DNA of 64,000 nt from Auanema rhodensis. Its lineage: Eukaryota; Animalia; Nematoda. This document shows positions 1 through 56,787 of this stretch, piece after piece. The position numbers and the translations under genes were made by a program. The stretch spans positions 15,004,001 to 15,068,000 of the forward strand of contig OZ059896.1 in the NCBI GenBank assembly GCA_964057225.1, read 5' to 3'. The number at the start of each line of letters is the position of its first letter. The stretch's first letter is position 1. The notes under the pieces are model-generated. The model searched no databases and was not told the DNA's origin. It worked only from the letters and a program-made list of their open reading frames with translations.

Positions 1-29
1 ATTGTCAATAACTATTATAATCAATATTG

Positions 30-50
30 AAAAAAAAAAAAGAAAAGAAA
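30..50 (-). terminator. RNA polymerase III oligo-dT terminator (present after A and B units, absent after C units)
   Basis: Minus strand TTTCTTTTCTTTTT... directly 3' of the discriminator base. Confidence 0.85.
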
Positions 51-51
51 C

Positions 52-134
52 TCCGTCGAGCCGGATTCGAACCAGCGACCTAAGGATATCTACACTTCTA
101 CAGTCCTCCGCTCTACCAACTGAGCTATCGACGG
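52..134 (-). tRNA. trnY-GTA: tRNA-Tyr(GTA) with 10-nt intron; representative of roughly 200 full-length type A copies (estimate)
   Basis: Minus strand CCGTCGA TA GCTC AGTTGGTA GAGC G GAGGA CT GTA G [AAGTGTAGAT] A TCCTT AGGTC GCTGG TTCGAAT CCGGC TCGACGG A: full cloverleaf, C1-G72 and A73 Tyr identity elements, A and B boxes, intron after position 37. Confidence 0.97.
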
Positions 135-156
135 AACGAATCTGTTGTTTTCAGAG

Positions 157-171
157 GTTATTGTCAATAAC
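157..171. promoter_or_regulatory. 15-bp dyad GTTATTG-T-CAATAAC, 23-37 bp upstream of each tRNA (variants GTGATTG/GTGAATG)
   Basis: Perfect 7-bp inverted repeat seen in sequence; it overlaps the expected TFIIIB footprint. Function is inference. Confidence 0.4.
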
Positions 172-172
172 T

Positions 173-222
173 GATATCTACACTTCTACAGTCCTCCGCT
201 CTACCAACTGAGCTATCGACGG
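173..222 (-). pseudogene. Type C monomer: tRNA-Tyr 5' exon + intron + 3 nt; lacks 3' exon, B box and terminator (representative)
   Basis: gatatctacacttctacag...cgacgg fused directly to ...caataact of the neighbouring spacer; 88-bp period. Confidence 0.9.
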
Positions 223-299
223 AACGAATCTGTTGTTTTCCAAAGTGATTGTCAATAACTACTATAATCTATATTGAAAATCGAAAAAAGAAAAGAAAC

Positions 300-353
300 T
301 CCGTCGAGCCTAACTTCTACAATCCTCCGCTCTACCAACTGAGCTATCGACGG
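300..353 (-). pseudogene. Type B monomer: 54-nt internally deleted tRNA-Tyr keeping acceptor stem and D arm (representative)
   Basis: Minus strand CCGTCGA TA GCTCAGTTGGTAGAGC GGAGGATTGTAGAAGTTAGGC TCGACGG A; 29 nt lost including T arm/B box; C32T; 131-bp period with its own downstream spacer. Confidence 0.9.
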
Positions 354-3300
354 AACGAAGCTGTTGTTTTCAGAGGTTATTGTCAATAACTGCTATAATC
401 AATATTTTAAATGGAACAAAAAGAAAATAAACTCAGTCGAGCCAGATTCGAACCAGCGACCTAAGGATATCTACACTTCTACAGTCCTCCGCTCTACCAA
501 ATGAGCTATCGACGGAACGAATCTGTTGTTTTCAGAGGTTATTGTCAATAACTGCTATAATCAATATTTTAAATGGAAGAAAAAGAAAAGAAACTCCGTC
601 GAGCCGGATTCGAACCAGCGACCTAAGGATATCTACACTTCTACAGTCCTCCGCTCTACCAACTGAGCTATCGACGGAACGAATCTGTTGTTTTCCGAAG
701 TGATTGTCAATAACTATTAGAATCAATATTGAAAAAAAAAAAAGAAAAGAAACTCCGTCGAGCCGGATTCGAACCAGCGACCTAAGGATATCTACACTTC
801 TACAGTCCTCCGCTCTACCAACTGAGCTATCGACGGAACGAATCTGTTGTTTTCAGAGGTTATTGTCAATAACTGATATCTACACTTCTACAGTCCTCCG
901 CTCTACCAACTGAGCTATCGACGGAACGAAGCTGTTGTTTTCAGAGGTTATTGTCAATAACTGCTATAATCAATATTTTAAATGGAACAAAAAGAAAAGA
1001 AACTCCGTCGAGCCGGATTCGAACCAGCGACCTAAGGATATCTACACTTCTACAGTCCTCCGCTCTACCAACTGAGCTATCGACGGAAAGAATCTGTTGT
1101 TTTCAGAGGTTATTGTCAATAACTGCTATAATCAATATTTTAAATGGAAGAAAAAGAAAAGAAATTCCGTCGAGCCGGATTCGAACCAGCGACCTAAGGA
1201 TATCTACACTTCTACAGTCCTCCGCTCTACCAACTGAGCTATCGACGGAACGAATCTGTTGTTTTCCGAAGTGATTGTCAATAACTACTATAATCTATAT
1301 TGAAAATCGAAAAAAGAGAAGAAACTCCGTCGAGCCTAACTTCTACAATCCTCCGCTCTACCAACTGAGCTATCGACGGAACGAATCTGTTCTTTTCAGA
1401 GGTTATTGTCAATAACTGCTATAATCAATATTTTAAGTAGAGCAAAAAGAAAAGAAACTCCGTCGAGCCGGATTCGAACCAGCGACCTAAGGATATCTAC
1501 ACTTCTACAGTCCTCCGCTCTACCAACTGAGCTATCGACGGAACGAATCTGTTGTTTTCAGAGGTTATTGTCAATAACTGCTATAATCAATATTTTAAAT
1601 GGAACAAAAAGAAAAGAAACTCCGTCGAGCCGGATTCGAACCAGCGACCTAAGGATATCTACACTTCTACAGTCCTCCGCTCTACCAACTGAGCTATCGA
1701 CGGAACGAATCTGTTGTTTTCCGAAGTGATTGTCAATAACTACTATAATCTATATTGAAAATCGAAAAAAAAGAAGAAACTCCGTCGAGCCTAACTTCTA
1801 CAATCCTCCGCTCTACCAACTGAGCTATCGACGGAACGAATCTGTTGTTTTGCGAAGTGATTGTCAATAACTACTATAATCTATATTGAAAATCGAAAAA
1901 AGAGAAGAAACTCCGTCGAGCCTAACTTCTACAATCCTCCGCTCTACCAACTGAGCTATCGACGGAACGAATCTGTTCTTTTCAGAGGTTATTGTCAATA
2001 ACTGCTATAATCAATATTTTAAATGGAACAAAAAGAAAAGAAACTCCGTCGAGCCGGATTCGAACCAGCGACCTAAGGATATCTACACTTCTACAGTCCT
2101 CCGCTCTACCAACTGAGCTATCGACGGAACGAATCTGTTCTTTTCAGAGGTTATTGTCAATAACTGCTATAATCAATATTTTAAGTAGAGCAAAAAGAAA
2201 AGAAACTCCGTCGAGCCGGATTCGAACCAGCGACCTAAGGATATCTACACTTCTACAGTCCTCCGCTCTACCAACTGAGCTATCGACGGAACGAATCTGT
2301 TGTTTTCAGAGGTTATTGTCAATAACTGCTATAGTCAATATTTTAAATGGAAGAAAAAGAAAAGAAACTCCGTCGAGCCGGATTCGAACCAGCGACCTAA
2401 GGATATCTACACTTCTACAGTCCTCCGCTCTACCAACTGAGCTATCGACGGAACGAATCTGTTGTTTTCCGAAGTGATTGTCAATAACTACTATAATCTA
2501 TATTGAAAATCGAAAAAAGAGAAGAAACTCCGTCGAGCCTAACTTCTACAATCCTCCGCTCTACCAACTGAGCTATCGACGGAACGAATCTGTTCTTTTC
2601 AGAGGTTATTGTCAATAACTGCTATAATCAATATTTTAAGTAGAGCAAAAAGAAAAGAAACTCCGTCGAGCCGGATTCGAACCAGCGACCTAAGGATATC
2701 TACACTTCTACAGTCCTCCGCTCTACCAACTGAGCTATCGACGGAACGAATCTGTTGTTTTCAGAGGTTATTGTCAATAACTGCTATAATCAATATTTTA
2801 AATGGAACAAAAAGAAAAGAAACTCCGTCGAGCCGGATTCGAACCAGCGACCTAAGGATATCTACACTTCTACAGTCCTCCGCTCTACCAACTGAGCTAT
2901 CGACGGAACGAATCTGTTGTTTTCCGAAGTGATTGTCAATAACTACTATAATCTATATTGAAAATCGAAAAAAAAGAAGAAACTCCGTCGAGCCTAACTT
3001 CTACAATCCTCCGCTCTACCAACTGAGCTATCGACGGAACGAATCTGTTCTTTTCAGAGGTTATTGTCAATAACTGCTATAATCAATATTTTAAGTAGAG
3101 CAAAAAGAAAAGAAACTCCGTCGAGCCGGATTCGAACCAGCGACCTAAGGATATCTACACTTCTACAGTCCTCCGCTCTACCAACTGAGCTATCGACGGA
3201 ACGAATCTGTTGTTTTCAGAGGTTATTGTCAATAACTGCTATAGTCAATATTTTAAATGGAAGAAAAAGAAAAGAAACTCCGTCGAGCCGGATTCGAACC

Positions 3301-6300
3301 AGCGACCTAAGGATATCTACACTTCTACAGTCCTCCGCTCTACCAACTGAGCTATCGACGGAACGAATCTGTTGTTTTCAGAGGTTATTGTCAATAACTG
3401 ATATCTACACTTCTACAGTCCTCCGCTCTACCAACTGAGCTATCGACGGAACGAATCTGTTGTTTTCCGAAGTGATTGTCAATAACTACTATAATCTATA
3501 TTGAAAATCGAAAAAAGAGAAGAAACTCCGTCGAGCCTAACTTCTACAATCCTCCGCTCTACCAACTGAGCTATCGACGGAACGAATCTGTTATTTTCAG
3601 AGGTTATTGTCAATAACTGCTATAATCAATATTTTAAATGGGAGAAAAAGAAAAGAAACTCCGTCGATCCGAATTCGAACCAGCGACCTAAGGATATCTA
3701 CACTTCTACAGTCCTCCGCTCTACCAACTGAGCTATCGACGGAACGAATCTGTTGTTTTCAGAGGTTATTGTCAATAACTGATATCTACACTTCTACAGT
3801 CCTCCGCTCTACCAACTGAGCTATCGACGGAACGAATCTGTTGTTTTCCAAAGTGATTGTCAATAACTACTATAATCTATATTGAAAATCGAAAAAAGAA
3901 AAGAAACTCCGTCGAGCCTAACTTCTACAATCCTCCGCTCTACCAACTGAGCTATCGACGGAACGAAGCTGTTGTTTTCAGAGGTTATTGTCAATAACTG
4001 CTATAATCAATATTTTAAATGGAACAAAAAGAAAATAAACTCAGTCGAGCCAGATTCGAACCAGCGACCTAAGGATATCTACACTTCTACAGTCCTCCGC
4101 TCTACCAACTGAGCTATCGACGGAACGAATCTGTTGTTTTCAGAGGTTATTGTCAATAACTGCTATAATCAATATTTTAAATGGAAGAAAAAGAAAAGAA
4201 ACTCCGTCGAGCCGGATTCGAACCAGCGACCTAAGGATATCTACACTTCTACAGTCCTCCGCTCTACCAACTGAGCTATCGACGGAACGAATCTGTTGTT
4301 TTCTGAAGTGATTGTTAATAACTATTATAATCAATATTGAAAAAAAAAAAAGAAAAGAAACTCCGTCGAGCCGGATTCGAACCAGCGACCTAAGGATATC
4401 TACACTTCTACAGTCCTCCGCTGTACCAACTGAGCTATCGACGGAACGAATCTGTTGTTTTCAGAGGTTATTGTCAATAACTGCTATAATCAATATTTTA
4501 AATGGAAGAAAAAGAAAAGAAACTCCGTCGAGCCGGATTCGAACCAGCGACCTAAGGATATCTACACTTCTACAGTCCTCCGCTCTACCAACTGAGCTAT
4601 CGACGGAACGAAGCTGTTGTTTTCAGAGGTTATTGTCAATAACTGCTATAATCAATATTTTAAATGGAACAAAAAGAAAATAAACTCAGTCGAGCCAGAT
4701 TCGAACCAGCGACCTAAGGATATCTACACTTCTACAGTCCTCCGCTCTACCAACTGAGCTATCGACGGAACGAATCTGTTGTTTTCAGAGGTTATTGTCA
4801 ATAACTGCTATAATCAATATTTTAAATGGAAGAAAAAGAAAAGAAACTCCGTCGAGCCGGATTCGAACCAGCGACCTAAGGATATCTACACTTCTACAGT
4901 CCTCCGCTCTACCAACTGAGCTATCGACGGAACGAATCTGTTGTTTTCAGAGGTTATTGTCAATAACTGATATCTACACTTCTACAGTCCTCCGCTCTAC
5001 CAACTGAGCTATCGACGGAACGAATCTGTTGTTTTCCAAAGTGATTGTCAATAACTACTATAATCTATATTGAAAATCGAAAAAAGAAAAGAAACTCCGT
5101 CGAGCCTAACTTCTACAATCCTCCGCTCTACCAACTGAGCTATCGACGGAACGAAGCTGTTGTTTTCAGAGGTTATTGTCAATAACTGCTATAATCAATA
5201 TTTTAAATGGAACAAAAAGAAAAGAAACTCCGTCGAGCCGGATTCGAACCAGCGACCTAAGGATATCTACACTTCTACAGTCCTCCGCTCTACCAACTGA
5301 GCTATCGACGGAACGAATCTGTTGTTTTCAGAGGTTATTGTCAATAACTGCTATAATCAATATTTTAAATGGAAGAAAAAGAAAAGAAATTCCGTCGAGC
5401 CGGATTCGAACCAGCGACCTAAGGATATCTACACTTCTACAGTCTCCGCTCTACCAACTGAGCTATCGACGGAACGAATCTGTTGTTTTCCGAAGTGATT
5501 GTCAATAACTACTATAATCTATATTGAAAATCGAAAAAAGAAAAGAAATTCCGTCGAGCCGGATTCGAACCAGCGACCTAAGGATATCTACACTTCTACA
5601 GTCTCCGCTCTACCAACTGAGCTATCGACGGAACGAATCTGTTCTTTTCAGAGGTTATTGTCAATAACTGCTATAATCAATATTTTAAGTAGAGCAAAAA
5701 GAAAAAAAACTCCGTCGAGCCGGATCCGAACCAGCGACCTAAGGATATCTACACTTCTACAGTCCTCCGCTCTACCAACTGAGCTATCGACGGAACGAAT
5801 CTGTTGTTTTCAGAGGTTATTGTCAATAACTGCTATAATCAATATTTTAAATGGAACAAAAAGAAAAGAAACTCCGTCGAGCCGGATTCGAACCAGCGAC
5901 CTAAGGATATCTCCACTTCTACAGTCCTCCGCTCTACCAACTGAGCTATCGACGGAACGAATCTGTTGTTTTCAGAGGTTATTGTCAATAACTGCTATAA
6001 TCAATATTTTAAATGGAACAAAAAGAAAAGAAACTCCGTCGAGCCGGATTCGAACCAGCGACCTAAGGATATCTCCACTTCTACAGTCCTCCGCTCTACC
6101 AACTGAGCTATCGACGGAACGAAGCTGTTGTTTTCAGAGGTTATTGTCAATAACTGCTATAATCAATATTTTAAATGGAACAAAAAGAAAAGAAACTCCG
6201 TCGAGCCGGATTCGAACCAGCGACCTAAGGATATCTCCACTTCTACAGTCCTCCGCTCTAACAACTGAGCTATCGACGGAACGAATCTGTTGTTTTCAGA

Positions 6301-6684
6301 GGTTATTGTCAATAACTGATATCTACACTTCTACAGTCCTCCGCTCTACCAACTGAGCTATCGACGGAACGAATCTGTTGTTTTCCAAAGTGATTGTCAA
6401 TAACTACTATAATCTATATTGAAAATCGAAAAAAGAGAAGAAACTCCGTCGAGCCTAACTTCTACAATCCTCCGCTCTACCAACTGAGCTATCGACGGAA
6501 CGAATCTGTTATTTTCAGAGGTTATTGTCAATAACTGCTATAGTCAATATTTTAAATGGGAGAAAAAGAAAAGAAACTCCGTCGAGCCGGATTCGAACCA
6601 GCGACCTAAGGATATCTACACTTCTACAGTCCTCCGCTCTACCAACTGAGCTATCGACGGAACGAATCTGTTGTTTTCAGAGGT

Positions 6685-7029
6685 CGTTCCATTCGGACTC
6701 CCCATATATGTAGCTGAAGGGTTAGAGCCAGACCACCAGAGGACCGAGGAATGGCTCCGCCTTCCCTCGTTCCCTTGGTCGGGAGTTCGCCTCTTAGCAA
6801 GCTCATGGACGGCTTGTAGTTTAGTCTTTATACTTATATTTATCTTATTGTATTGTATCTTTATCTTTGTATATTATTGTTGTAGTTTCATGCCAATAAA
6901 TCTTTCTCTCTTTTATCTTATGATTGACCTTATGCTCTTTATTCCTTACCGCTACACCAAGGAATACTATGCGCGTCATAGTATAAACTACAATGGTTTA
7001 TATTATCGACGCAGGAGCATAACGGAACG
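6685..7029 (+). repeat. 5' LTR
   Basis: CGTTCC...GGAACG, inverted termini; AATAAA near 6895. Confidence 0.92.
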
Positions 7030-7042
7030 TGGAGGTTCCACC
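7030..7042 (+). other. Primer binding site complementary to the tRNA-Gln 3' end
   Basis: TGGAGGTTCCACC is the reverse complement of GGTGGAACCT-CCA, the metazoan tRNA-Gln 3' end; abuts the 5' LTR. Confidence 0.85.
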
Positions 7043-9891
7043 TCGAACTCATCTTTTGAAAAAAAAAAAAATTTTTTTATTGTAAAAGTCCATTTTTGCA
7101 TTCTAAATTATAAATTCCTCCACTTGAAACAACAAAATGAAGGCGCCAATTTGTTTTAAGGTACAGATACAAGGGATCTCGCTTAAATGCGAGATAGGAC
7201 CAATAAAAATTTTTGCCCACCGTCCTCAATTTAAAACCGTCTGAATGTCCACCCTTTTCTATATCGTATCTTGTACCGCTTCTCATGCCATTTTGAGGAC
7301 GTTTGGATTGAAATAGAGGACAATTTCGCCAAACGAGAAATTATAATTGTTCACATTTTTTTTTTGGGCATAGAGAAGTTTGATTATTGGAACAAAAAGT
7401 TATAAGACGCGCGCAATTGATTATAGTTTGTATATTTTGTGGTCAGGACTAGAATTTTGAAAAATTATTATATTCAGACGTAAAAGATCATTTTACATAT
7501 TATTTTGCGGGAAACCAAAAACGGTTACATAAATTGAATATAAAAAGAGACCACACTAGTCCGAAAAAGCCTGGTAAATCTGCAATAAGACTTCTCAGCT
7601 CTTATTTGACAGTCAGGTCAAGTTGGCGGAAGCATAACTGCTACGGATTTTATCCCCGTAGATTATGTCACCTTCCTCAAATCATTTCGTTGTTTCAACT
7701 CATAAGATACCCCTTATTTCCTACAGTAATCCTAAGTAAATTGGAAATGTTTAAAAATAGACGTATTTTTCTCATTTTTTAAAAGAAATTCGCTTAGGAA
7801 AACGCACTTTTGCTTATTTTGATCAAGAAAAAGGACAGCCTTTTCAATAACTTTCCTCAAACCTCATTAGCATGCACAATGTCGAAAACATTTTGAGCAA
7901 AACATGCTATTTAAGGGAAAAGGAATGAGGAAAAGATTGCAAACATAAGTCCATTTTCTTGACGAAAACAGAGCAAAGTGCACAAAAATAAAAACACAGA
8001 GTACAAAATTTATTCAGTCAATACCCATATTTGATTTGCAACCGAGTTCGAAACTCAGAGGCAAGAAACATAGGAGTTTCGCTCGCAATTAAATCTTCAC
8101 TATATTCTAAACCTCGCGAAACCCTAAGTTCCAAACCAAATAATGAGTCATCATAAACAATATAGATTTTAAACAATAATCTATATAATAAATAATAATA
8201 AAAATGACTCTTTTCCTGGTACCAGGCCCAAGGACGTGCGGTTAATAAACCGGCCCTACCATTATATACATGAGCGCATAGATCAACTAAGCACCTTCGA
8301 CCAACAAGCTCCACTTCGGGAGCTACATCTACGAAGGTGGCAAAGTTTATATGGCCCTGCCCCAAATAATACATTTGGTGATCTTCGATAAACTAAAGTA
8401 ATCAAATAATCAAACATAAAATGGAGATACACAAACCATTAAAATTATATCAAGATTTGGCCTATAAGCCAAAACTCCTTCTCCATCGTACTGAACGATG
8501 GATTCGTATAATTTCCACAGGACATAAGTCATGCCAGTGGGATTATAACGTTGGAAATCCATTTTTTTTTCTTTCTTTCTTTTCTTTTCTTTTGTTTCTA
8601 ACCTTAAAATAAATGTTCAAAGGCCGCAAAAGTACAAAGGGGATGACATGAATAAAGTTTTTTTTAAAGATTCTAGAGCAGTAAGAAAACAAAATTAGAG
8701 GAAAGTGCAAGAGCGGATAAAAATAGTTTTTGCGAAGAGATAAACATCATTAACTATAATAAGCTTACGGTAGATAGGCGGAGTCAGATTCCTGGCCAGG
8801 ATTTGAAAAACTCCCTCTCATTTACCCTCCGCATCGCCCAGCAAAGCATGACTATCCTATTGCTCCCGAATCTTTCTCTCTCCCAACACACATCTAAAAG
8901 AATCTTACGCACCTTACGTCAACATCCCACACGTAGCTCACCATTCTCGGTTTTTCCAAACCAAGAGTCCTATAAAGGTGGCCAAAAGATTCTCATCGGT
9001 TTTCCGAGCCCTTTACTCGTCCGATACCAACAGTGACGCTACTGTCGCAAGTCGTCGCAGAAGCCGTACCCGACTTCTTAGTGTTCAAATAGAAAAACCG
9101 CACCAACCAGCCGAGAAGCCGAAGCCGCAAGTCGACCAGTTTTATACTCCCCGAGAAGGAACATATTCACCTTCTGACGACACCTACGAAGATCCGGACT
9201 TCATCAAAGCCGACGACAGAAAAAATTTTTATATACATTCTTTTCTTTTCTGTAAATTGTAAAAGGAAAGTAACGGTGAATTAGAAAACTTTTTGATGAG
9301 AGATTAAGTGAGTAAACAACCAAAAATAAGGAATAAGTGAAAATATAATAGAAATAAATGGCTACCGTAATCCTATACGACCGATAGAGATAAAATTTTG
9401 CGCTAAACTGAGCTCCATATGTATCTCCAGGAAGAGACGAACATTGGCAGGCGCCTAAGCCACACCCCATCTGAGTGGTAGCCTCCATTAGTACTCAAGG
9501 ATTCATTCAGAGAGACATATGGAGACGAGTAAATTATTAACTAAAATTATCCCCATCATCATTAGGATACGAGTAACCATGTAACCGAAATATTTAATAA
9601 TTCCTTAGTGTCTCACATAAATCACACATTCATGAAACAAAGAATTTTTTTTTATTACAGTACTACAATGACTAAATTTATTTTCTAATCCTCCGTTACA
9701 AAATAACATAAAACCTATTATTGTATTCAAATTCTATCTTAATACCATAAAGAAACCTATTAAAACTATTTATATATCTTTCTACATGTAGATTTTGAAA
9801 CTTTTAAATTTATTTGTAAACTCCTAGACTCTAAAACTCAGCTACATATACACTAAAAACTCTTTATATCGCGCGGACGCGAAAAATCTTT

Positions 9892-9900
9892 GAAAAAGGG
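9892..9900 (+). other. Polypurine tract
   Basis: GAAAAAGGG ending 2 nt before the TG of the 3' LTR. Confidence 0.7.
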
Positions 9901-9902
9901 CA

Positions 9903-10247
9903 TGTTCCATTCGGACTCCCCATATATGTAGCTGAAGGGTTAGAGCCAGACCACCAGAGGACCGAGGAATGGCTCCGCCTTCCCTCGTTCCCTTGGTCGG
10001 GAGTTCGCCTCTTAGCAAGCTCATGGACGGCTTGTAGTTTAGTCTTTATACTTATATTTATCTTATTGTATTGTATCTTTATCTTTGTATATTATTGTTG
10101 TAGTTTCATGCCAATAAATCTTTCTCTCTTTTATCTTATGATTGACCTTATGCTCTTTATTCCTTACCGCTACACCAAGGAATACTATGCGCGTCATAGT
10201 ATAAACTTCAATGGTTTATATTATCGACGCAGGAGCATAACGGAGCG
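9903..10247 (+). repeat. 3' LTR
   Basis: TGTTCC...GGAGCG, 342/345 identical to the 5' LTR by manual comparison. Confidence 0.92.
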
Positions 10248-22200: not shown

Positions 22201-25200
22201 AACTTCTACAATCCTCCGCTCTACCAACTGAGCTATCGACGGAACGAAGCTGTTGTTTTCAGAGGTTATTGTCAATAACTGCTATAATCAATATTTTAAA
22301 TGGAACAAAAAGAAAAGAAACTCCGTCGAGCCGGATTCGAACCAGCGACCTAAGGATATCTACACTTCTACAGTCCTCCGCTCTACCAACTGAGCTATCG
22401 ACGGAACGAATCTGTTGTTTTCAGAGGTTATTGTCAATAACTATTATAATCAATATTGAAAAAAAAAAAAGAAAAGAAACTCCGTCGAGCCGGATTCGAA
22501 CCAGCGACCTAAGGATATCTACACTTCTACAGTCCTCCGCTCTACCAACTGAGCTATCGACGGAACGAATCTGTTGTTTTCCAAAGTGATTGTCAATAAC
22601 TACTATAATCTATATTGAAAATCGAAAAAAGAAAAGAAACTCCGCCGAGCCTAACTTCTACAATCCTCCGCTCTACCAACTGAGCTATCGACGGAACGAA
22701 GCTGTTGTTTTCAGAGGTTATTGTCAATAACTGCTATAATCAATATTTTAAATGGAACAAAAAGAAAAGAAACTCCGTCGAGCCGGATTCGAACCAGCGA
22801 CCTAAGGATATCTACACTTCTACAGTCCTCCGCTCTACCAACTGAGCTATCGACGGAACGAATCTGTTGTTTTCAGAGGTTATTGTCAATAACTGCTATA
22901 ATCAATATTTTAAATGGAAGAAAAAGAAAAGAAATTCCGTCGAGCCGGATTCGAACCAGCGACCTAAGGATATCTACACTTCTACAGTCCTCCGCTCTAC
23001 CAACTGAGCTATCGACGGAACGAATCTGTTGTTTTCCAAAGTGATTGTCAATAACTACTATAATCTATATTGAAAATCGAAAAAAGAGAAGAAACTCCGT
23101 CGAGCCTAACTTCTACAATCCTCCGCTCTACCAACTGAGCTATCGACGGAACGAATCTGTTCTTTTCAGAGGTTATTGTCAATAACTGCTATAATCAATA
23201 TTTTAAGTAGAGCAAAAAGAAAAGAAACTCCGTCGAGCCGGATTCGAACCAGCGACCTAAGGATATCTACACTTCTACAGTCCTCCGCTCTACCAACTGA
23301 GCTATCGACGGAACGAATCTGTTGTTTTCAGAGGTTATTGTCAATAACTGCTATAATCAATATTTTAAATGGAACAAAAAGAAAAGAAACTCCGTCGAGC
23401 CGGATTCGAACCAGCGACCTAAGGATATCACCACTTCTACAGTCCTCCGCTCTACCAACTGAGCTATCGACGGAACGAAGCTGTTGTTTTCAGAGGTTAT
23501 TGTCAATAACTGCTATAATCAATATTTTAAATGGAACAAAAAGAAAAGAAACTCCGTCGAGCCGGATTCGAACCAGCGACCTAAGGATATCACCACTTCT
23601 ACAGTCCTCCGCTCTACCAACTGAGCTATCGACGGAACGAAGCTGTTCTTTTCAGAGGTTATTGTCAATAACTGCTATAATCAATATTTTAAGTAGAGCA
23701 AAAAGAAAAGAAACTCCGTCGAGCCGGATTCGAACCAGCGACCTAAGGATATCTACACTTCTACAGTCCTCCGCTCTACCAACTGAGCTATCGACGGAAC
23801 GAATCTGTTGTTTTCAGAGGTTATTGTCAATAACTGCTATAATCAATATTTTAAATGGAACAAAAAGAAAAGAAACTCCGTCGAGCCGGATTCGAACCAG
23901 CGACCTAAGGATATCACCACTTCTACAGTCCTCCGCTCTACCAACTGAGCTATCGACGGAACGAATCTGTTCTTTTCAGAGGTTATTGTCAATAACTGCT
24001 ATAATCAATATTTTAAGTAGAGCAAAAAGAAAAGAAACTCCGTCGAGCCGGATTCGAACCAGCGACCTAAGGATATCTACACTTCTACAGTCCTCCGCTC
24101 TACCAACTGAGCTATCGACGGAACGAATCTGTTGTTTTCAGAGGTTATTGTCAATAACTGCTATAATCAATATTTTAAGTAGAGCAAAAAGAAAAGAAAC
24201 TCCGTCGAGCCGGATTCGAACCAGCGACCTAAGGATATCACCACTTCTACAGTCCTCCGCTCTACCAACTGAGCTATCGACGGAACGAAGCTGTTGTTTT
24301 CAGAGGTTATTGTCAATAACTGCTATAATCAATATTTTAAATGGAACAAAAAGAAAAGAAACTCCGTCGAGCCGGATTCGAACCAGCCACCTAAGGATAT
24401 CTCCACTTCTACAGTCCTCCGCTCTAACAACTGAGCTATCGACGGAACGAATCTGTTGTTTTCAGAGGTTATTGTCAATAACTGATATCTACACTTCTAC
24501 AGTCCTCCGCTCTACCAACTGAGCTATCGACGGAACGAATCTGTTGTTTTCCAAAGTGATTGTCAATAACTACTATAATCTATATTGAAAATCGAAAAAA
24601 GAAAAGAAACTCCGTCGAGCCTAACTTCTACAATCCTCCGCTCTACCAACTGAGCTATCGACGGAACGAAGCTGTTGTTTTCAGAGGTTATTGTCAATAA
24701 CTGCTATAATCAATATTTTAAATGGAACAAAAAGAAAAGAAACTCAGTCGAGCCAGATTCGAACCAGCGACCTAAGGATATCTACACTTCTACAGTCCTC
24801 CGCTCTACCAACTGAGCTATCGACGGAACGAATCTGTTGTTTTCAGAGGTTATTGTCAATAACTGATATCTACACTTCTACAGTCCTCCGCTCTACCAAC
24901 TGAGCTATCGACGGAACGAATCTGTTGTTTTCCAAAGTGATTGTCAATAACTACTATAATCTATATTGAAAATCGAAAAAAGAAAAGAAACTCCGTCGAG
25001 CCGGATTCGAACCAGCGACCTAAGGATATCTACACTTCTACAGTCCTCCGCTCTACCAACTGAGCTATCGACGGAACGAATCTGTTGTTTTCAGAGGTTA
25101 TTGTCAATAACTGCTATAATCAATATTTTAAATGGAACAAAAAGAAAAGAAACTCCGTCGAGCCGGATTCGAACCAGCGACCTAAGGATATCTCCACTTC

Positions 25201-43200: not shown

Positions 43201-45321
43201 CTGAGCTATCGACGGAACGAATCTGTTGTTTTCAGAGGTTATTGTCAATAACTGCTATAGTCAATATTTTAAAGGGAAGAAAAAGAAAAGAAACTCCGTC
43301 GAGCCGGATTCGAACCAGCGACCTAAGGATATCTACACTTCTACAGTCCTCCGCTCTACCAACTGAGCTATCGACGGAACGAATCTGTTGTTTTCCAAAG
43401 TGATTGTCAATAACTACTATAATCTATATTGAAAATCGAAAAAAGAAAAGAAACTCCGTCGAGCCTAACTTCTACAATCCTCCGCTCTACCAACTGAGCT
43501 ATCGACGGAACGAAGCTGTTGTTTTCAGAGGTTATTGTCAATAACTGCTATAATCAATATTTTAAATGGGAGAAAAAGAAAAGAAACTCCGTCGAGCCGG
43601 ATTCGAACCAGCGACCTAAGGATATCTACACTTCTACAGTCCTCCGCTCTACCAACTGAGCTATCGACGGAACGAATCTGTTGTTTTCAGAGGTTATTGT
43701 CAATAACTGCTATAGTCAATATTTTAAAGGGAAGAAAAAGAAAAGAAACTCCGTCGAGCCGGATTCGAACCAGCGACCTAAGGATATCTACACTTCTACA
43801 GTCCTCCGCTCTACCAACTGAGCTATCGACGGAACGAATCTGTTGTTTTCCAAAGTGATTGTCAATAACTACTATAATCTATATTGAAAATCGAAAAAAG
43901 AAAAGAAACTCCGTCGAGCCTAACTTCTACAATCCTCCGCTCTACCAACTGAGCTATCGACGGAACGAATCTGTTGTTTTCAGAGGTTATTGTCAATAAC
44001 TGCTATAATCAATATTTTAAATGGAACAATAAGAAAAGAAACTCCGTCGAGCCGGATTCGAACCAGCGACCTAAGGATATCTACACTTCTACAGTCCTCC
44101 GCTCTACCAACTGAGCTATCGACGGAACGAAGCTGTTGTTTTCAGAGGTTATTGTCAATAACTGCTATAATCAATATTTTAAATGGAAGAAAAAGAAAAG
44201 AAACTCCGTTGAGCCGGATTCGAACCAGCGACCTAAGGATATCTACACTTCTACAGTCCTCCGCTCTAACAACTGAGCTATCGACGGAACGAATCTGTTG
44301 TTTTCAGAGGTTATTGTCAATAACTGCTATAATCAATATTTTAAATGGAAGAAAAAGAAAAGAAACTCCGTCGAGCCGGATTCGAACCAGCGACCTAAGG
44401 ATATCTACACTTCTACAGTCCTCCGCTCTACCAACTGAGCTATCGACGGAACGAATCTGTTGTTTTCCGAAGTGATTGTCAATAACTACTATAATCTATA
44501 TTGAAAATCGAAAAAAGAGAAGAAACTCCGTCGAGCCTAACTTCTACAATCCTCCGCTCTACCAACTGAGCTATCGACGGAACGAATCTGTTCTTTTCAG
44601 AGGTTATTGTCAATAACTGCTATAATCAATATTTTAAATGGGAGAAAAAGAAAAGAAACTCCGTCGAGCCGGATTCGAACCAGCGACCTAAGGATATCTA
44701 CACTTCTACAGTCCTCCGCTCTACCAACTGAGCTATCGACGGAACGAATCTGTTGTTTTCAGAGGTTATTGTCAATAACTGATATCTACACTTCTACAGT
44801 CCTCCGCTCTACCAACTGAGCTATCGACGGAACGAATCTGTTGTTTTCCGAAGTGAATGTCAATAACTACTATAATCTATATTGAAAATCGAAAAAAGAA
44901 AAGAAACTCCGTCGAGCCTAACTTCTACAATCCTCCGCTCTACCAACTGAGCTATCGACGGAACGAATCTGTTGTTTTCAGAGGTTATTGTCAATAACTG
45001 ATATCTACACTTCTACAGTGCTCTGCTCTACCAACTGAGCTATCGACGGAACGAATCTGTTGTTTTCCAAAGTGAATGTCAATAACTACTATAATCTATA
45101 TTGAAAATCGAAAAAAGAAAAGAAACTCCGTCGAGCCTAACTTCTACAATCCTCCGCTCTACCAACTGAGCTATCGACGGAACGAAGCTGTTGTTTTCAG
45201 AGGTTATTGTCAATAACTGCTATAATCAATATTTTAAATGGAAGAAGAAGAAAAAAAACTCCGTCGAGCCGGATTCGAACCAGCGACCTAAGGATATCTA
45301 CACTTCTACAGTGCTCCGCTC
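10248..45321 (-). repeat. tRNA-Tyr(GTA) tandem array, segment 2 (~35 kb, higher-order repeats)
   Basis: Same three monomers uninterrupted between the LTR element and the Merlin insertion. Confidence 0.97.
13554..13636 (-). tRNA. Variant copy with GTG (His) anticodon on a tRNA-Tyr body; probably a pseudogene
   Basis: cttcCacag at 13601 instead of cttcTacag; also carries G71T and C62T. Confidence 0.7.
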
Positions 45322-45391
45322 GGCGCTTTTTCCGTTTCTATACCCCCCGATTTTAGCCCCGCCCCTTCTGCCGTTGGGCGCATACTTTTCT
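45322..45391 (+). repeat. Merlin left TIR
   Basis: Reverse complement of 46600-46669 with 3 mismatches. Confidence 0.93.
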
Positions 45392-45461
45392 TAAATGTGA
45401 AAACAATATGAAATACGGCGAAACTTTATACAAATTCATTATGAACATTATTAAATACAGA

Positions 45462-46388
45462 TTAACAAGCTTGAATTTCTTCCTGGATAAATTCAACAAT
45501 ATCATTAAAAATACATTCAAAAAGGTCCCTGTTAGCATTTCTTCTACGCCACATAAACTCACAGAGGTAACCATCTAACATATTTTGATGTACCCCATGC
45601 ATGCGATTGAATTTAGCTTTAGCTAAACTCCACAGGCCTTCAATCATATTGGTATTAGCTCCACTCTCGGGATCAGTGAAGTTATATCTATGATTGACTG
45701 TTAAATGCCTATAGTCTTGTAAAAGACTATCAATACCCCCATATGATCTCCAACAATCACTGATTATGGTGCTTTCGCGCTCAATACAGTTAATAATACA
45801 ACTGTTTAGAGTTTCTGCACTTCTATTAGGAACAGCATATAAAAAACAATCCCTGTTTCCTTGCATACCCCTCCGAACACCCATTGCGCTGGCTTAATCC
45901 TACCCACATTAAATTTTCTACGAGAAACTAACGTTTCATCGATTTCAACAGTTAAATTAGGACCTCCAATCTTTAGAGGATGCTTCAAAATATTAAACGC
46001 GCAAACTTCTCTCATGAAGTTATTATAATCGACGACTGTTTTGCATGATCCTATTCTTAACTCATCTTGACAGAACTTGACAGTGGTGTACTCCTTGCTC
46101 CAGCAGTAAACAAAAAGTATGAACTTGGTATATCCACATTTTGAGCCTAAAATATTGGTTTTGATAATATATAGATTTTAACTTTATACCTTGTAGAAAT
46201 GTTCCATTTTTTATTAGAATTTCCCTTCTACAGTCTCTTCTGGTACATCTCCACTTATTTCGAACAGTTGAAAGAGTCATCTGTCTTGAACATCGGTCAC
46301 ATTCTTTAGTTTGAGGGATTACGCCCTTTTCTTGTAGGAATTGAATAGCATCAGCTTCAGTACGAAGTTTTTCTTTTAGAGCGAACAT
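45462..46388 (-). pseudogene. Merlin transposase, one intron (46147-46189), 1-nt frameshift near 45851
   Basis: N-terminal Zn ribbon (CDRC...WRC...C); the spliced frame continues QG|SKCGYTKF...KIGG...VEIDET...QWVFGG; after the frameshift IISDCW, HLTVNH, TNMIEGLW, YLCEFMWR. ACA GGG AT lacks one G relative to ETG-DCF. Confidence 0.9.
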
Positions 46389-46599
46389 TTAGACAACGTA
46401 TGGTTGATAATGTAGATGCAATGACCAATAATGATTCAGTTTTTGTATCATAATATATTCAAATTTTATTATACTTATTACAGCCATTTACAATGTATTT
46501 TACTCTCTCATAATTTATTATTAATCTGTTGAAATATTATAACCCCATTGGGGGGAAACCCCCCCAAACCCCCCGTTTTAGGAAGGGAAGCCTAATGGT

Positions 46600-46669
46600 A
46601 GAAAAGTATGCGCCCAACGGCAAAAGGGGCGGGGCTAAAATCGGGGGGTATAGAAACGGAAAAAGAACC
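46600..46669 (-). repeat. Merlin right TIR
   Basis: Reverse complement of 45322-45391. Confidence 0.93.
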
Positions 46670-52600: not shown

Positions 52601-53695
52601 ATGGAAGAAAAAGAAAAGAAACTCCGTCGAGCCGGATTCGAACCAGCGACCTAAGGATATCTACACTTCTACAGTCCTCCGCTCTACCAACTGAGCTATC
52701 GACGGAACGAATCTGTTGTTTTCAGAGGTTATTGTCAATAACTGCTATAGTCAATATTTTAAATGGAAGAAAAAGAAAAGAAACTCCGTCGAGACGGATT
52801 GGAATCAGCGACCTAAGGATATCTACACTTCTACAGTCCTCCGCTCTACCAACTGAGCTATCGACGGAACGAATCTGTTGTTTTCAGAGGTTATTGTCAA
52901 TAACTGCTATAGTCAATATTTTAAAGGGAAGAAAAAGAAAAGAAACTCCGTCGAGCCGGATTCGAACCAGCGACCTAAGGATATCTACACTTCTACAGTC
53001 CTCCGCTCTACCAACTGAGCTATCGACGGAACGAACCTGTTGTTTTCAGAGGTTATTGTCAATAACTGACATCTACACTTCTTCAGTGCTCTGCTCTACC
53101 AACTGAGCTATCGACGGAACGAATCTGTTGTTTTCCAAAGTGAATGTCAATAACTACTATAATCTATATTGAAAATCGAAAAAAGAAAAGAAACTCCGTC
53201 GAGCCTAACTTCTACAATCCTCCGCTCTACCAACTGAGCTATCGACGGAACGAAGCTGTTGTTTTCAGAGGTTATTGTCAATAACTGCTATAATCAATAT
53301 TTTAAATGGAACAAAAAGAAAAGAAACTCCGTCGAGCCGGATTCGAACCAGCGACCTAAGGATATCTCCACTTCTACAGTCCTCCGCTCTACCAACTGAG
53401 CTATCGACGGAACGAATCTGTTGTTTTCAGAGGTTTTTGTCAATAACTGCTATAATCAATATTTTAAATGGGAGAAAAAGAAAAGAAACTCCGTCGAGCC
53501 GGATTCGAACCAGCGACCTAAGGATATCTACACTTCTACAGTCCTCCGCTCTACCAACTGAGCTATCGACGGAACGAATCTGTTGTTTTCAGAGGTTATT
53601 GTCAATAACTGATATCTACACTTCTACAGTCCTCCGCTCTACCAACTGAGCTATCGACGGAACGAATCTGTTGTTTTCCAAAGTGATTGTCAATA
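46670..53695 (-). repeat. tRNA-Tyr(GTA) tandem array, segment 3 (rich in full-length A units)
   Basis: Same monomers between the Merlin and LINE insertions. Confidence 0.97.
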
Positions 53696-54444
53696 CCTCA
53701 CTAGATTATTCACTAGACGAAAAACGACAGATTTATGTCAATATTTCAAAATAGTTAAGAGCAACTCAAATTTCAGCAAATCATTGTTCAGACTGAAAGA
53801 ACATGCATATTCTTTTCGTCAACACGACTTTTTGATTGTGGCTCCGAGATACCAGTCTAACGCGGCACTGTCTAGTTTCGAATATCGTAGAATCAAAGAT
53901 TGGAACCAGCTTCACTCCATTTTGATTAATATTGAGAAAGTTTCTAATTTTCGTAGTTGTATTATGAACCATAATTCTTCTTCATTGTAACTTTGTTTTT
54001 AACTTGTTTTTATTTTTCTTTTTTTTTTTTTTCTTCAATGAGATTGTTTTGTTAATCGTTTTGTGTTAAGCTGTTGCTCCTTCTTCTTTTGTTCTCTCAG
54101 TTTTCCTAGGCATCTGACCTATAGACATGAGTCGTACGGTCTGAGCACGGTAATCACTTATTTGATAGAACGGGTTTGACCTTACTCTTTGTGTCACCGT
54201 ACCTAGACAAACCAAGAAGTGATTGGCTTCGAATTGCAATTTTCAAGCTGAAAACTCAAGATCATAACTCTTATAATTGAGCACATTCTTAACTAAAAAC
54301 CAATTCAAAGCTAACTCTGGAGTTAAAAGAAAAAAAAAAGCAGCTACCGAAAGGTTAATTTTAATGTTCTTATCTTAATTTAACCTCACACCTTCCTTGT
54401 AACCTGTGGTCAGTTGTGTTGAATAAACTTAAACTTAAACTTAA
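53696..54444 (+). mobile_element. 5'-truncated non-LTR retrotransposon (CR1/L2-like)
   Basis: ORF2 C-terminal fragment, ~450-nt 3' UTR, AATAAA followed by an (AAACTT)n tail; array sequence resumes in register (caata|actact) with no TSD. Confidence 0.85.
53697..53990 (+). pseudogene. C-terminal fragment of CR1-type ORF2 (post-RT region)
   Basis: LTRLFTRRKTTDLCQYFKIV...SSFEYRRIKDWNQL matches the L..RR...DL...(Y/F)KI and F..R.I..WN.L motifs of CR1-clade ORF2 ends. Confidence 0.75.
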
Positions 54445-56747
54445 ACTACTATAATCTATATTGAAAATCGAAAAAAGAAAAGAAACTCCGTCGAGCCTAA
54501 CTTCTACAATCCTCCGCTCTACCAACTGAGCTATCGACGGAACGAAGCTGTTGTTTTCAGAGGTTATTGTCAATAACTGCTATAATCAATATTTTAAATG
54601 GAACAAAAAGAAAAGAAACTCCGTTGAGCCGGATTCGAACCAGCGACCTAAGGATATCTACACTTCTACAGTCCTCCGCTCTACCAACTGAGCTATCGAC
54701 GGAACGAATCTGTTGTTTTCCGAAGTGATTGTCAATAACTATTATAATCAATACTGAAAAAAAAAAAGAAAAGAAACTCCGTCGAGCCGGATTCGAACCA
54801 GCGACCTAAGGATATCTACACTTCTACAGTCCTCCGCTCTACCAACTGAGCTATCGACGGAACGAATCTGTTGTTTTCAGAGGTTATTGTCAATAACTGA
54901 TATCTACACTTCTACAGTCCTCCGCTCTACCAACTGAGCTATCGACGGAACGAATCTGTTGTTTTCCAAAGTGATTGTCAATAACTACTATAATCTATAT
55001 TGAAAATCGAAAAAAGAAAAGAAACTCCGTCGAGCCTAACTTCTACAATCCTCCGCTCTACCAACTGAGCTATCGACGGAACGAAGCTGTTGTTTTCAGA
55101 GGTTATTGTCAATAACTGCTATAATCAATATTTTAAATGGAACAAAAAGAAAAGAAACTCCGTCGAGCCGGATTCGAACCAGCGACCTAAGGATATCTAC
55201 ACTTCTACAGTCCTCCGCTCTACCAACTGAGCTATCGACGGAACGAATCTGTTGTTTTCAGAGGTTATTGTCAATAACTGCTATGATCAATATTTTAAAT
55301 GGAAGAAAAAGAAAAGAAATTCCGTCGAGCCGGATTCGAACCAGCGACCTAAGGATATCTACACTTCTACAGTCCTCCGCTCTACCAACTGAGCTATCGA
55401 CGGAACGAATCTGTTGTTTTCCGAAGTGATTGTCAATAACTACTATAATCTATATTGAAAATCGAAAAAAGAGAAGAAACTCCGTCGAGCCTAACTTCTA
55501 CAATCCTCCGCTCTACCAACTGAGCTATCGACGGAACGAATCTGTTCTTTTCAGAGGTTATTGTCAATAACTGCAATAATCAATATTTTAAGTGGAGCAA
55601 AAAGCAAAAAAAATTCCGTCGAGCCGGATTCGAACCAGCGACCTAAGGATATCTACACTTCTACAGTCCTCCGCTCTACCAACTGAGCTATCGACGGAAC
55701 GAATCTGTTGTTTTCAGAGGTTATTGTCAATAACTGCTATAATCAATATTTTAAATGGAACAAAAAGAAAAGAAACTCCGTCGAGCCGGATTCGAACCAG
55801 CGACCTAAGGATATCTCCACTTCTACAGTCCTCCGCTCTACCAACTGAGCTATCGACGGAACGAAGCTGTTGTTTTCAGAGGTTATTGTCAATAACTGCT
55901 ATAATCAATAATTAAATGGAACAAAACGAAAAGAAACTCCGTCGAGCCGGATTCGAACCAGCGACCTAAGGATATCTCCACTTCTACAGTCCTCCGCTCT
56001 ACCAACTGAGCTATCGACGGAACGAATCTGTTGTTTTCAGAGGTTATTGTCAATAACTGCTATAATCAATATTTTAAATGGGAGAAAAAGAAAAGAAACT
56101 CCGTCGAGCCGGATTCGAACCAGCGACCTAAGGATATCTACACTTCTACAGTCCTCCGCTCTACCAACTGAGCTATCGACGGAACGAATCTGTTGTTTTC
56201 AGAGGTTATTGTCAATAACTGATATCTACACTTCTACAGTTCTCCGCTCTACCAACTGAGCTATCGACGGAACGAATCTGTTGTTTTCAGAGGTTATTGT
56301 CAATAACTGATATCTACACTTCTACAATCCTCCGCTCTACCAACTGAGCTATCGACGGAACGAAGCTGTTGTTTTCAGAGGTTATTGTCAATAACTGCTA
56401 TAATCAATATTTTAAATGGAACAAAAAGAAAAGAAACTCCGTCGAGCCGGATTCGAACCAGCGACCTAAGGATATCTCCACTTCTACAGTCCTCCGCTCT
56501 ACCAACTGAGCTATCGACGGAACGAATCTGTTGTTTTCAGAGGTTTTTGTCAATAACTGCTATAATCAATATTTTAAATGGGAGAAAAAGAAAAGAAACT
56601 CCGTCGAGCCGGATTCGAACCAGCGACCTAAGGATATCTACACTTCTACAGTCCTCCGCTCTACCAACTGAGCTATCGACGGAACGAATCTGTTGTTTTC
56701 AGAGGTTATTGTCAATAACTGATATCTACACTTCTACAGTCCTCCGC
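54445..56747 (-). repeat. tRNA-Tyr(GTA) tandem array, segment 4
   Basis: Same monomers between the LINE and Maverick insertions; ends in the middle of a C unit. Confidence 0.97.
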
Positions 56748-56787
56748 AGTAGAGAGCCGTGCAAAATTTACTAACCACGCCCCCAAA

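What the first reader, a model, noticed from the sequence alone, without database searches (positions are those of the whole stretch)
1..56747. A satellite made of tRNA-Tyr genes: over 50 kb and hundreds of copies of one isoacceptor
Seen: ~51 kb of head-to-tail tRNA-Tyr(GTA), most full copies intact with A box, B box, intron and terminator, and spacers of only ~79 bp. Knowledge: animal genomes normally carry on the order of tens of tRNA-Tyr genes, and large tRNA arrays are best known from Entamoeba. Inference: either a structural chromosome domain built on Pol III/TFIIIC binding (insulator, condensin loading, pairing or centromere-like site, germline-limited DNA) or a dosage amplification for Tyr-rich products.
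Basis: partly seen in the sequence, partly recalled or inferred. Interest (0 to 1): 0.8.

Follow-up and report, generated by a model that had tools for sequence, protein, structure and literature searches.

The report
Satellite DNA built from tRNA-Tyr genes
About 51 kb of this window is one tyrosine tRNA gene plus a 79-base spacer repeated head to tail 360 times, in what looks like a nematode related to Auanema; it evolves like ordinary satellite DNA, so it is striking but of a kind already reported.

Summary
Window 1-56747 is a one-strand (minus) tandem array of a tRNA-Tyr(GTA) gene. The gene is 83 nt, with a 10-nt intron after position 37, consensus A and B boxes, C1-G72/A73, and a T-run terminator. 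The spacer is 79 nt, giving a 162-bp unit.

There are 360 monomers covering 50.5 kb. Of these, 195 are full length (119 exact gene copies in the window; 139 of the 195 have unchanged exons). Another 112 are an internally deleted form with no T arm or B box (~131 bp), and 49 are 5' halves (88 bp). The three forms interleave in higher-order repeats, and multi-kb blocks are duplicated at 99.4-99.6% identity.

Variable sites are as dense in the gene as in the spacer (29/83 vs 28/79). Damaging variants such as G19T have been copied 10-14 times. Three mobile elements interrupt the array and a fourth, carrying a type-B DNA polymerase, cuts it at 56748.

Flank proteins match only Auanema sp. JU1783, at 66-79% identity. 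A 2026 preprint on A. rhodense reports 19,554 tRNA loci and tRNA arrays in germline-restricted, somatically eliminated DNA.

Best reading: a tRNA-gene-derived satellite spread by unequal exchange, probably in such DNA. Expression, Pol III binding and elimination are untested. It is a new member of a known kind; interest is moderate.

The parts
1..56747 (-). Tandem array of tRNA-Tyr(GTA)-derived monomers: 360 units of three forms (162, about 131 and 88 bp), 50.5 kb net of insertions. It runs off the left end of the window.
52..134 (-). Example of an intact gene copy: 83 nt, anticodon GTA, 10-nt intron after position 37, A box TAGCTCAGTTGG, B box GGTTCGAATCC.
   Evidence: Rfam RF00005 at 61 bits; cloverleaf arms in the MFE fold; sequence
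516..594 (-). Example 79-nt spacer. T-run terminator directly after the gene, then AT-rich DNA upstream of the next copy.
300..353 (-). Example of the 131-bp form. The gene remnant is 54 nt: 29 nt are lost, including the 3' anticodon stem, variable loop and T arm/B box, and C32 is changed to T. It has its own spacer subtype.
173..222 (-). Example of the 88-bp form: the 5' 50 nt of the gene joined directly to the last 38 nt of a spacer. No B box and no terminator.
6685..10244 (+). LTR element inserted in the array. The LTRs (6685-7026 and 9903-10244, 342 nt) differ at 2 positions. A purine tract precedes the 3' LTR. No recognisable coding domain. About 116 nt of array are missing at the junctions.
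45322..46669 (-). Merlin/IS1595-type DNA transposon inside one tRNA copy: 66-nt terminal inverted repeats, 8-bp target duplication CTCCGCTC, and a transposase broken into pieces.
   Evidence: (PF12762, E 7e-16)
53696..54444 (.). 749-bp insertion in a spacer, ending in (CTTAAA)n. Unclassified; possibly a truncated retroelement.
56748..56900 (+). Terminus of a mobile element, with three to four subterminal repeats of about 32 nt. It cuts a tRNA copy and ends the array within the window.
60128..62865 (+). Protein-primed type-B DNA polymerase gene in at least three frame-shifted pieces. Probably belongs to the element that starts at 56748 (Maverick/Polinton-like).
   Evidence: (PF03175, E 9e-23 and 2e-16)
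63203..63958 (-). 251-aa ORF of unknown function. Its only relatives are unnamed proteins of Auanema sp. JU1783.

Best explanation
A single nuclear tRNA-Tyr(GUA) gene and its 79-nt spacer became the 162-bp monomer of a satellite DNA, in a rhabditid nematode close to Auanema.

The array grows and is homogenised by unequal exchange and gene conversion, at the scale of single units, higher-order repeats of 2-4 units, and multi-kb blocks. Two dead deletion derivatives are carried along in the same process.

By sequence, most full copies are still competent Pol III genes. Individual copies are not under detectable purifying selection, so the array as a whole is better read as repeat accumulation than as a maintained gene family.

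[quoted passage not shown] Selection there is weak, and tandem repeats and mobile elements pile up.

Shown: anatomy, copy classes, variation pattern, mobile-element insertions, nematode/Auanema affinity of the flank. Inferred: mechanism of spread, lack of selected function, germline restriction.
For: Tandem, single-strand array of 360 monomers. About 45% of monomers lack the B box yet are interleaved with full copies in recurring patterns with periods of 219, 293, 424 and 455 bp. Blocks of 3.46 kb and 2.43 kb are duplicated at 99.6% and 99.4% identity, 7.75 and 9.07 kb away. Variable sites: 29/83 in the gene vs 28/79 in the spacer, Fisher p = 1; the same holds for the 131- and 88-bp forms. Uncompensated changes at conserved or paired positions have been multiplied: G19T in 14 copies, acceptor-stem G78A in 12 and G81T in 10, T-stem C72T in 10 (pre-tRNA numbering). 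56 of 195 full-length units carry exon changes. Three mobile elements lie inside the array and one cuts its end. The flank ORF matches only Auanema sp. JU1783 proteins among 5.8 billion, and a Merlin fragment is shared with a JU1783 contig. Short exons at 57.8-58.2 kb have TTTTCAG acceptors and introns of about 46 nt, as in nematodes. The A. rhodense preprint reports 61% of the germline genome eliminated, 19,554 tRNA loci, arrays of tRNA, 5S and U2 loci in germline-restricted DNA, and the authors' own view that repeats accumulate there under weak selection. The older, roughly three-fold smaller assembly had about 500 tRNA loci.
Against: The species is not identified. JU1783 DNA is only 66-70% identical to the flank. 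The four A. rhodense FISH-probe repeats and the telomere repeat are absent from the window. Full tRNA genes cover 22-33% of each 10-kb window here, whereas the preprint says ncRNA loci are always below 20% per 10 kb, so the window may not come from that assembly.

No elimination-boundary motif could be sought properly, because its sequence is not given in the text; only weak GGC..GCC near-palindromes were found.

Frequency-weighted diversity is 2.4-fold lower in the gene than in the spacer (0.015 vs 0.036). The full and deleted forms differ at 1/54 gene positions against 8/77 spacer positions (p = 0.08). Some constraint on the gene part, or conversion from functional genes, is therefore not excluded. 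119 identical, fully equipped genes could well be transcribed.
Confidence: 0.6

Rival explanations
1. Germline dosage amplification. The array is a bank of working tRNA-Tyr genes that supplies the germline or oocyte and is then discarded from the soma, as a tRNA counterpart of oocyte-type 5S rRNA gene arrays.
For: 119 identical gene copies with consensus A and B boxes, correct Tyr identity elements, a canonical intron position and terminators. 139 of 195 full-length units have unchanged exons. In A. rhodense the germline-restricted arrays include 5S, U2 and tRNA loci, all high-demand small RNAs, and only 215 of 19,554 tRNA loci were called pseudogenes. Diversity weighted by frequency is lower in the gene than in the spacer. 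CpG is not depleted (9 observed vs 6.7 expected per unit), so there is no sign of methylation-type silencing.
Against: About 45% of monomers are dead derivatives amplified equally. Gene and spacer have the same density of variable sites. Damaging variants have been multiplied. Mobile elements are tolerated inside gene copies. The clustered Ser-Tyr-Tyr tRNA genes of Arabidopsis keep intact promoters yet are transcriptionally silent, so intact sequence does not show expression. No reason for a special tyrosine demand is known.
Confidence: 0.2
2. Chromosome-structural domain. Dense B boxes recruit TFIIIC (and through it condensin or cohesin, or nuclear-envelope tethering), or the array serves as a chromosome-specific pairing or segregation block in meiosis.
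For: 179 exact B boxes and 337 A boxes in 56 kb, all in one orientation. The A. rhodense authors speculate that chromosome-specific repeat blocks aid homologue pairing or the unusual X segregation. TFIIIC-dependent condensin loading and insulator activity of tRNA genes are established in yeast and mammals (general knowledge).
Against: No direct evidence. B boxes are missing from 45% of units and are irregularly spaced. The variation pattern is neutral. Any satellite could fill a pairing role, so the tRNA origin would be incidental.
Confidence: 0.12
3. Assembly artefact: a short cluster inflated, or reads mis-joined, by the assembler.
For: Highly similar 162-bp repeats are hard to assemble, and no reads are available here.
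Against: The array is not a uniform stutter. It has 61 distinct full-unit sequences, a non-periodic order of three unit types, unique insertions with clean target duplications, and diverged multi-kb duplications. An independent array of the same kind exists in another assembly.
Confidence: 0.04

Closest known systems
Germline-restricted arrays of small-RNA genes (tRNA, 5S, U2) in Auanema rhodense (bioRxiv 10.64898/2026.08.27.747507)
   Same: Nematode of the same or a nearby genus, judged by the flank proteins. Tandem blocks of tRNA loci within repeat- and transposon-rich DNA. A tRNA count in the tens of thousands implies arrays of this type.
   Different: The paper's main text does not name tRNA-Tyr or describe units. 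It states that ncRNA density is below 20% per 10 kb, whereas here it is 22-33%. The window carries none of the four published probe repeats. The species and the elimination status of this window are unproven.
Arabidopsis chromosome 1 Ser-Tyr-Tyr tRNA gene cluster (PMC7544208)
   Same: Tandem amplification of tRNA-Tyr genes far beyond codon demand, all in one orientation, over about 40 kb, with conserved Pol III elements.
   Different: The Arabidopsis unit holds three genes of two isoacceptors, repeated 27 times. It is silenced through DNA methylation. Here the unit is one gene plus 79 nt, there are 360 units with truncated forms, and CpG is not depleted.
Entamoeba tRNA gene arrays (Clark 2006 and Tawari 2008, as cited in PMC2888827)
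   Same: tRNA genes organised as long tandem arrays of uncertain, possibly structural, function.
   Different: From my own knowledge, Entamoeba units carry several different tRNA genes with short-tandem-repeat spacers and hold most of that genome's tRNA genes. Here there is one isoacceptor, no short tandem repeats, and decayed copies.
Oocyte-type 5S rRNA gene arrays and the tandem tRNA repeat of Xenopus (general knowledge)
   Same: Thousands of Pol III genes in short tandem units; a precedent for germline dosage amplification.
   Different: Those arrays are retained in the soma and regulated by chromatin and TFIIIA. Their expression has been demonstrated; here it has not been tested.
Independent tRNA-Tyr array in ENA assembly ERZ28675667, contig ctg598 (loci L003/L004)
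   Same: The whole 24.6-kb contig is head-to-tail intron-containing tRNA-Tyr(GTA) genes, more than 100 copies at 96% identity.
   Different: 207-bp unit, different acceptor stem, intron of about 19 nt, GC-rich spacer. The organism is unknown. It was found with a query made from tRNA-Tyr, so the match to Tyr is biased.

Membership tests
Nuclear eukaryotic tRNA-Tyr(GUA) gene | Cloverleaf matching the tRNA covariance model | tested here: met
   RF00005 at 61 bits against a gathering score of 29, full model 1-71. The arms also appear in the single-sequence fold.
Nuclear eukaryotic tRNA-Tyr(GUA) gene | Anticodon GTA, C1-G72 pair, A73 discriminator, intron between positions 37 and 38 | tested here: met
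   Read directly from 52-134(-). The cmscan alignment shows 13 nt where the model has 3, at the anticodon loop.
Nuclear eukaryotic tRNA-Tyr(GUA) gene | Internal A and B boxes and a downstream T-run terminator | tested here: met
   A box in 337 units and B box in 179. T4 within 20 nt downstream of all 119 exact copies. The 131- and 88-bp forms lack the B box.
Nuclear eukaryotic tRNA-Tyr(GUA) gene | Transcribed, spliced and aminoacylated | not testable with these tools
   No RNA or ChIP data are available.
Satellite DNA with higher-order repeats | Long head-to-tail array of a short monomer in one orientation | tested here: met
   360 monomers, all on the minus strand.
Satellite DNA with higher-order repeats | Monomer subtypes arranged in recurring multi-unit periods, plus block duplications | tested here: met
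   TRF periods of 219, 293, 424 and 455 bp. Unit-type string and transitions. Blocks of 3.5 and 2.4 kb at 99.4-99.6% identity. The full and deleted forms differ by about 12% in the spacer but only 1.5-2.5% within a form.
Satellite DNA with higher-order repeats | No per-copy purifying selection on the former gene | tested here: met
   Variable sites 29/83 vs 28/79, p = 1. Caveat: pi is 0.015 in the gene vs 0.036 in the spacer.
Satellite DNA with higher-order repeats | Heterochromatic packaging | not testable with these tools
   Would need H3K9me3 data.
Germline-restricted (somatically eliminated) DNA of Auanema-type nematodes | The source organism undergoes programmed DNA elimination | tested here: inconclusive
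   Flank proteins hit only Auanema sp. JU1783, at 66-79% identity, while DNA identity is 66-70%. The species is not determined.
Germline-restricted (somatically eliminated) DNA of Auanema-type nematodes | Lower read depth in soma than in germline; bounded by telomere-addition sites with the 29-nt palindromic motif | not testable with these tools
   No reads are available and the motif sequence is not given in the text. A crude GGC..GCC palindrome scan found nothing convincing.
Germline-restricted (somatically eliminated) DNA of Auanema-type nematodes | Contains the named A. rhodense repeat families | tested here: not met
   Probes AT-1, XR-1, XT-1 and XT-2 are absent at up to 5 edits.
Entamoeba-type tRNA arrays | Units holding several different tRNA genes, separated by short tandem repeats | tested here: not met
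   Only one isoacceptor is present. The spacers contain no short tandem repeats.

The most novel reading that the evidence does not exclude
The array is germline-restricted and is actually used there. Either it is a Pol III gene bank transcribed only before elimination, so that programmed DNA elimination acts as the off-switch for an oocyte-type tRNA supply (alongside 5S and U2 arrays). Or it is a TFIIIC-bound chromosomal block that contributes to meiotic pairing or to the unusual chromosome segregation of Auanema-like nematodes.
Probability: 0.15. Interest if true: 0.8.

Novelty: new member of a known kind. Interest (0 to 1): 0.5.

Why it matters
The array shows how an intact Pol III gene can be captured as a satellite monomer, and which decay forms travel with it. 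If the array is germline-restricted, its copy-specific variants offer ready-made tags: the intron T43G change in 29 copies and G19T in 14. These would let one ask whether eliminated DNA in nematodes is transcribed by Pol III before it is discarded. That bears on the open question of whether eliminated DNA has a germline function or is simply tolerated junk. Practically, such arrays inflate tRNA gene counts, and they produce spurious ORFs of up to 448 aa because 162 bp is exactly 54 codons.

Tried and rejected
- ARAGORN's call of tRNA-Leu(tag) was rejected. It is an artefact of bacterial mode on an intron-containing gene.
- Exact look-ups of two window ORFs in the public gene index found nothing.
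- Searching the array's own spurious ORF as a protein found no copy of this array elsewhere. It did find an unrelated tRNA-Tyr array. A second weak hit, P0006, led to short metagenome contigs that do not translate to the query and was dropped.
- The PolB piece gave only one close hit (59% identity), from a Logan run (SRR28678151) whose organism I could not identify.
- A. rhodense FISH-probe repeats and the TTAGGC telomere repeat are absent from the window.
- Metagenome scans: the anticodon-plus-intron pattern found nothing. The 5' exon found one single-copy gene with a different intron, which is uninformative.
- JU1783 loci L001 and L002 carry no tRNA genes.
- The supplementary tables of the preprint (Table S4 on RNA arrays) are not held.
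- A brute-force offset scan timed out and was replaced by megablast.
- One fuzzy-regex count of full copies returned only exact matches and was redone unit by unit.
- Literature searches for tRNA-derived satellites, and for tRNA-Tyr arrays in nematodes, found nothing more specific.
- Pol III-targeted integration by the LTR element (left junction 24 nt upstream of a tRNA start) was considered. It rests on one insertion with a deleted junction and no target duplication, so it is not claimed.
Full report
OBSERVATION

Rfam's tRNA model matches the copies end to end at 61 bits (gathering score 29). The matches are 83 nt long, with 13 nt where the model has 3 in the anticodon loop. Read from the sequence, the gene starts CCGTCGA and ends TCGACGG plus A73. 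It has anticodon GTA, the 10-nt intron AAGTGTAGAT after G37, A box TAGCTCAGTTGG and B box GGTTCGAATCC. It is followed after two bases by T3, T4 and T5 runs. ARAGORN in bacterial mode finds 148 copies but names them Leu(tag), because it reads the intron as a long variable arm. That call is an artefact.

COUNTS

- There are 119 exact copies of the 83-nt gene and none on the plus strand.
- Anchoring on the tRNA 5' half gives 360 monomers.
- 195 monomers are full length (180 of exactly 162 bp). 112 are of about 131 bp and 49 are of 88 bp.
- Of the 195 full-length units, 118 have the consensus gene, 74 differ at 1-3 positions and 3 carry indels.
- 139 of the 195 have unchanged exons.
- Full genes cover 22-33% of each 10-kb stretch.

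ANATOMY OF THE VARIANTS

- The 131-bp form keeps gene positions 1-41 with C32T. It loses 29 nt that include the 3' anticodon stem, variable loop and whole T arm (hence the B box), and keeps the last 11 nt.
- Its spacer differs from the full-unit spacer at 8 positions plus a 2-nt indel.
- The 88-bp form is the first 50 nt of the gene fused to the last 38 nt of a spacer.
- Within a form, units differ by 1.5-2.5%.

The three forms are interleaved in recurring orders, giving TRF periods of 219, 293, 424 and 455 bp. Blocks of 3.46 kb and 2.43 kb are repeated at 99.6% and 99.4% identity, at offsets of 7.75 and 9.07 kb. This is the architecture of a satellite with higher-order repeats, expanded by unequal exchange at several scales.

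SELECTION

Among the 180 units of 162 bp, 29 of 83 gene positions and 28 of 79 spacer positions vary (Fisher p = 1). The two truncated forms show the same parity. There are 30 distinct variants in the gene and 30 in the spacer, with 15 and 12 singletons respectively.

Variants that should damage a tRNA have been copied many times (pre-tRNA numbering):
- G19T in the D loop, 14 copies
- G78A and G81T in the acceptor stem, 12 and 10 copies
- C72T in the T stem, 10 copies

Individual copies therefore show no purifying selection. Two observations point the other way. Frequency-weighted diversity is lower in the gene (0.015 vs 0.036). The full and deleted forms differ at 1/54 gene positions against 8/77 spacer positions (p = 0.08). 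Either could reflect descent of the two forms from two paralogous genes with different flanks, conversion from functional genes, or weak constraint.

CpG is not depleted (9 per unit against 6.7 expected), so there is no trace of methylation-driven decay.

INTERRUPTIONS

1. 6685-10244 is an LTR element. Its 342-nt LTRs differ at two positions, and a purine tract precedes the 3' LTR. No coding domain was recognised. Its left junction is 24 nt upstream of a tRNA start and its right junction is inside another copy, with about 116 nt of array missing.
2. 45322-46669 is a Merlin/IS1595-type transposon (PF12762, E 7e-16). It has 66-nt inverted ends and an 8-bp duplication of CTCCGCTC inside a tRNA copy.
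3. 53696-54444 is a 749-bp insert ending in (CTTAAA)n.
4. At 56747/56748 a tRNA copy is cut by the end of another element with subterminal 32-nt repeats. AT-rich DNA follows, then a type-B DNA polymerase gene in frame-shifted pieces (PF03175) and a 251-aa ORF.

The right 'end' of the array is therefore an insertion, and the window begins inside the array. The true length is unknown. I only describe this virus-like element.

ORGANISM

The 251-aa flank ORF has four relatives among 5.8 billion proteins. All are unnamed proteins of Auanema sp. JU1783, at 66-79% identity. The corresponding JU1783 DNA is 66-70% identical, and a Merlin fragment is shared. The best PolB hit (59%) is from an unidentified Logan run.

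Short exons at 57.8-58.2 kb have TTTTCAG acceptors and introns of about 46 nt, typical of rhabditid nematodes.

The window is not human. It is most likely from a nematode in or near Auanema, but not from JU1783 itself.

CONTEXT FROM THE LITERATURE

A 2026 preprint on A. rhodense (10.64898/2026.08.27.747507) reports:
[quoted passage not shown] - It contains 'arrays of 5S rRNA, several tRNA loci and U2'.
- The germline assembly has 19,554 tRNA loci, of which 215 are pseudogenes.

The earlier, roughly three-fold smaller assembly had about 500 tRNA loci. The preprint's authors favour repeat accumulation under weak selection in eliminated regions, and speculate on roles in pairing and X-chromosome segregation.

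The preprint does not name tRNA-Tyr. Its Table S4 is not held. Its statement that ncRNA density is always below 20% per 10 kb does not fit this window, and its four probe repeats are absent here. The link is therefore by analogy, not by identity.

ELSEWHERE

Translating the array (162 bp is 54 codons, giving ORFs up to 448 aa) and searching it as a protein found ENA ERZ28675667 contig ctg598. That contig is 24.6 kb made entirely of a different tRNA-Tyr(GTA) array: 207-bp unit, more than 100 copies, 96% identity, with a different acceptor stem, intron and spacer.

Other comparisons:
- Arabidopsis has a 27-fold Ser-Tyr-Tyr cluster that keeps its Pol III elements yet is silent.
- A survey notes that tRNA arrays arose independently many times in eukaryotes.

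VERDICT

The best explanation (confidence 0.6) is a tRNA-Tyr-gene-derived satellite, spread and homogenised by unequal exchange. It sits in repeat- and transposon-rich DNA that is probably germline-restricted, in an Auanema-like nematode. Many copies are still formally competent Pol III genes but are not individually maintained.

Rivals:
- Germline dosage bank, 0.2
- TFIIIC, pairing or other structural domain, 0.12
- Assembly artefact, 0.04

Novelty: a new member of a known kind. Interest: 0.5. It is an unusually pure and large single-isoacceptor array with useful internal tags, but arrays of tRNA loci in Auanema germline DNA are already reported, and nothing here shows function.

Noticed in passing
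L003 1-15807 and L004 1-21115 (ENA ERZ28675667, ctg598, 24,571 bp): An entire contig from another assembly is an independent tandem array of intron-containing tRNA-Tyr(GTA) genes: 207-bp unit, more than 100 copies, 96% matches, GC-rich spacer, different acceptor stem. The organism is unknown, and gene callers turned the array into dozens of fake proteins.
   Followed up: partly
window 56748-64000: The array is cut by the terminus of a mobile element with subterminal repeats of about 32 nt. The element carries a frame-shifted protein-primed type-B DNA polymerase (Maverick/Polinton-like) and a 251-aa ORF whose only relatives are in Auanema sp. JU1783. The 333-aa ORF at 58881-59882 is Cys-rich and has no Pfam match.
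   Followed up: partly
window 6685-10244: A young LTR element (342-nt LTRs, 2 differences) with no recognisable coding capacity. Its left junction is 24 nt upstream of a tRNA start, and about 116 nt of array are missing at the junctions. Each LTR contains a GGC..GCC near-palindrome (6753, 9971), probably by chance.
   Followed up: partly
window 45322-46669: A Merlin/IS1595-type DNA transposon with 66-nt inverted ends and a clean 8-bp target duplication inside a tRNA copy. A related fragment is present in an Auanema sp. JU1783 contig (L001 10182-10243, 81% identity).
   Followed up: yes
window 53696-54444: An unclassified 749-bp insertion in a spacer, ending in a (CTTAAA)n tail.
   Followed up: no
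window 23176-24522 and ten other plus-strand ORFs: Because the unit is 162 bp (54 codons), runs of full units read as open frames of up to 448 aa on the strand opposite the tRNA. These could be mis-annotated as proteins.
   Followed up: yes
window 57260-57400 and 58400-58500: Short tandem duplications (a unit of about 57 bp repeated three times, and a unit of about 57 bp repeated twice) in the AT-rich stretch between the array and the polymerase gene.
   Followed up: no
window, intron of the tRNA (for example 88-97, minus strand): The 10-nt intron largely repeats the anticodon-loop sequence (TGTAGA..TGTAGA) rather than pairing with it. It may have arisen by a local duplication. The single-sequence fold shows no anticodon-intron helix.
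   Followed up: no
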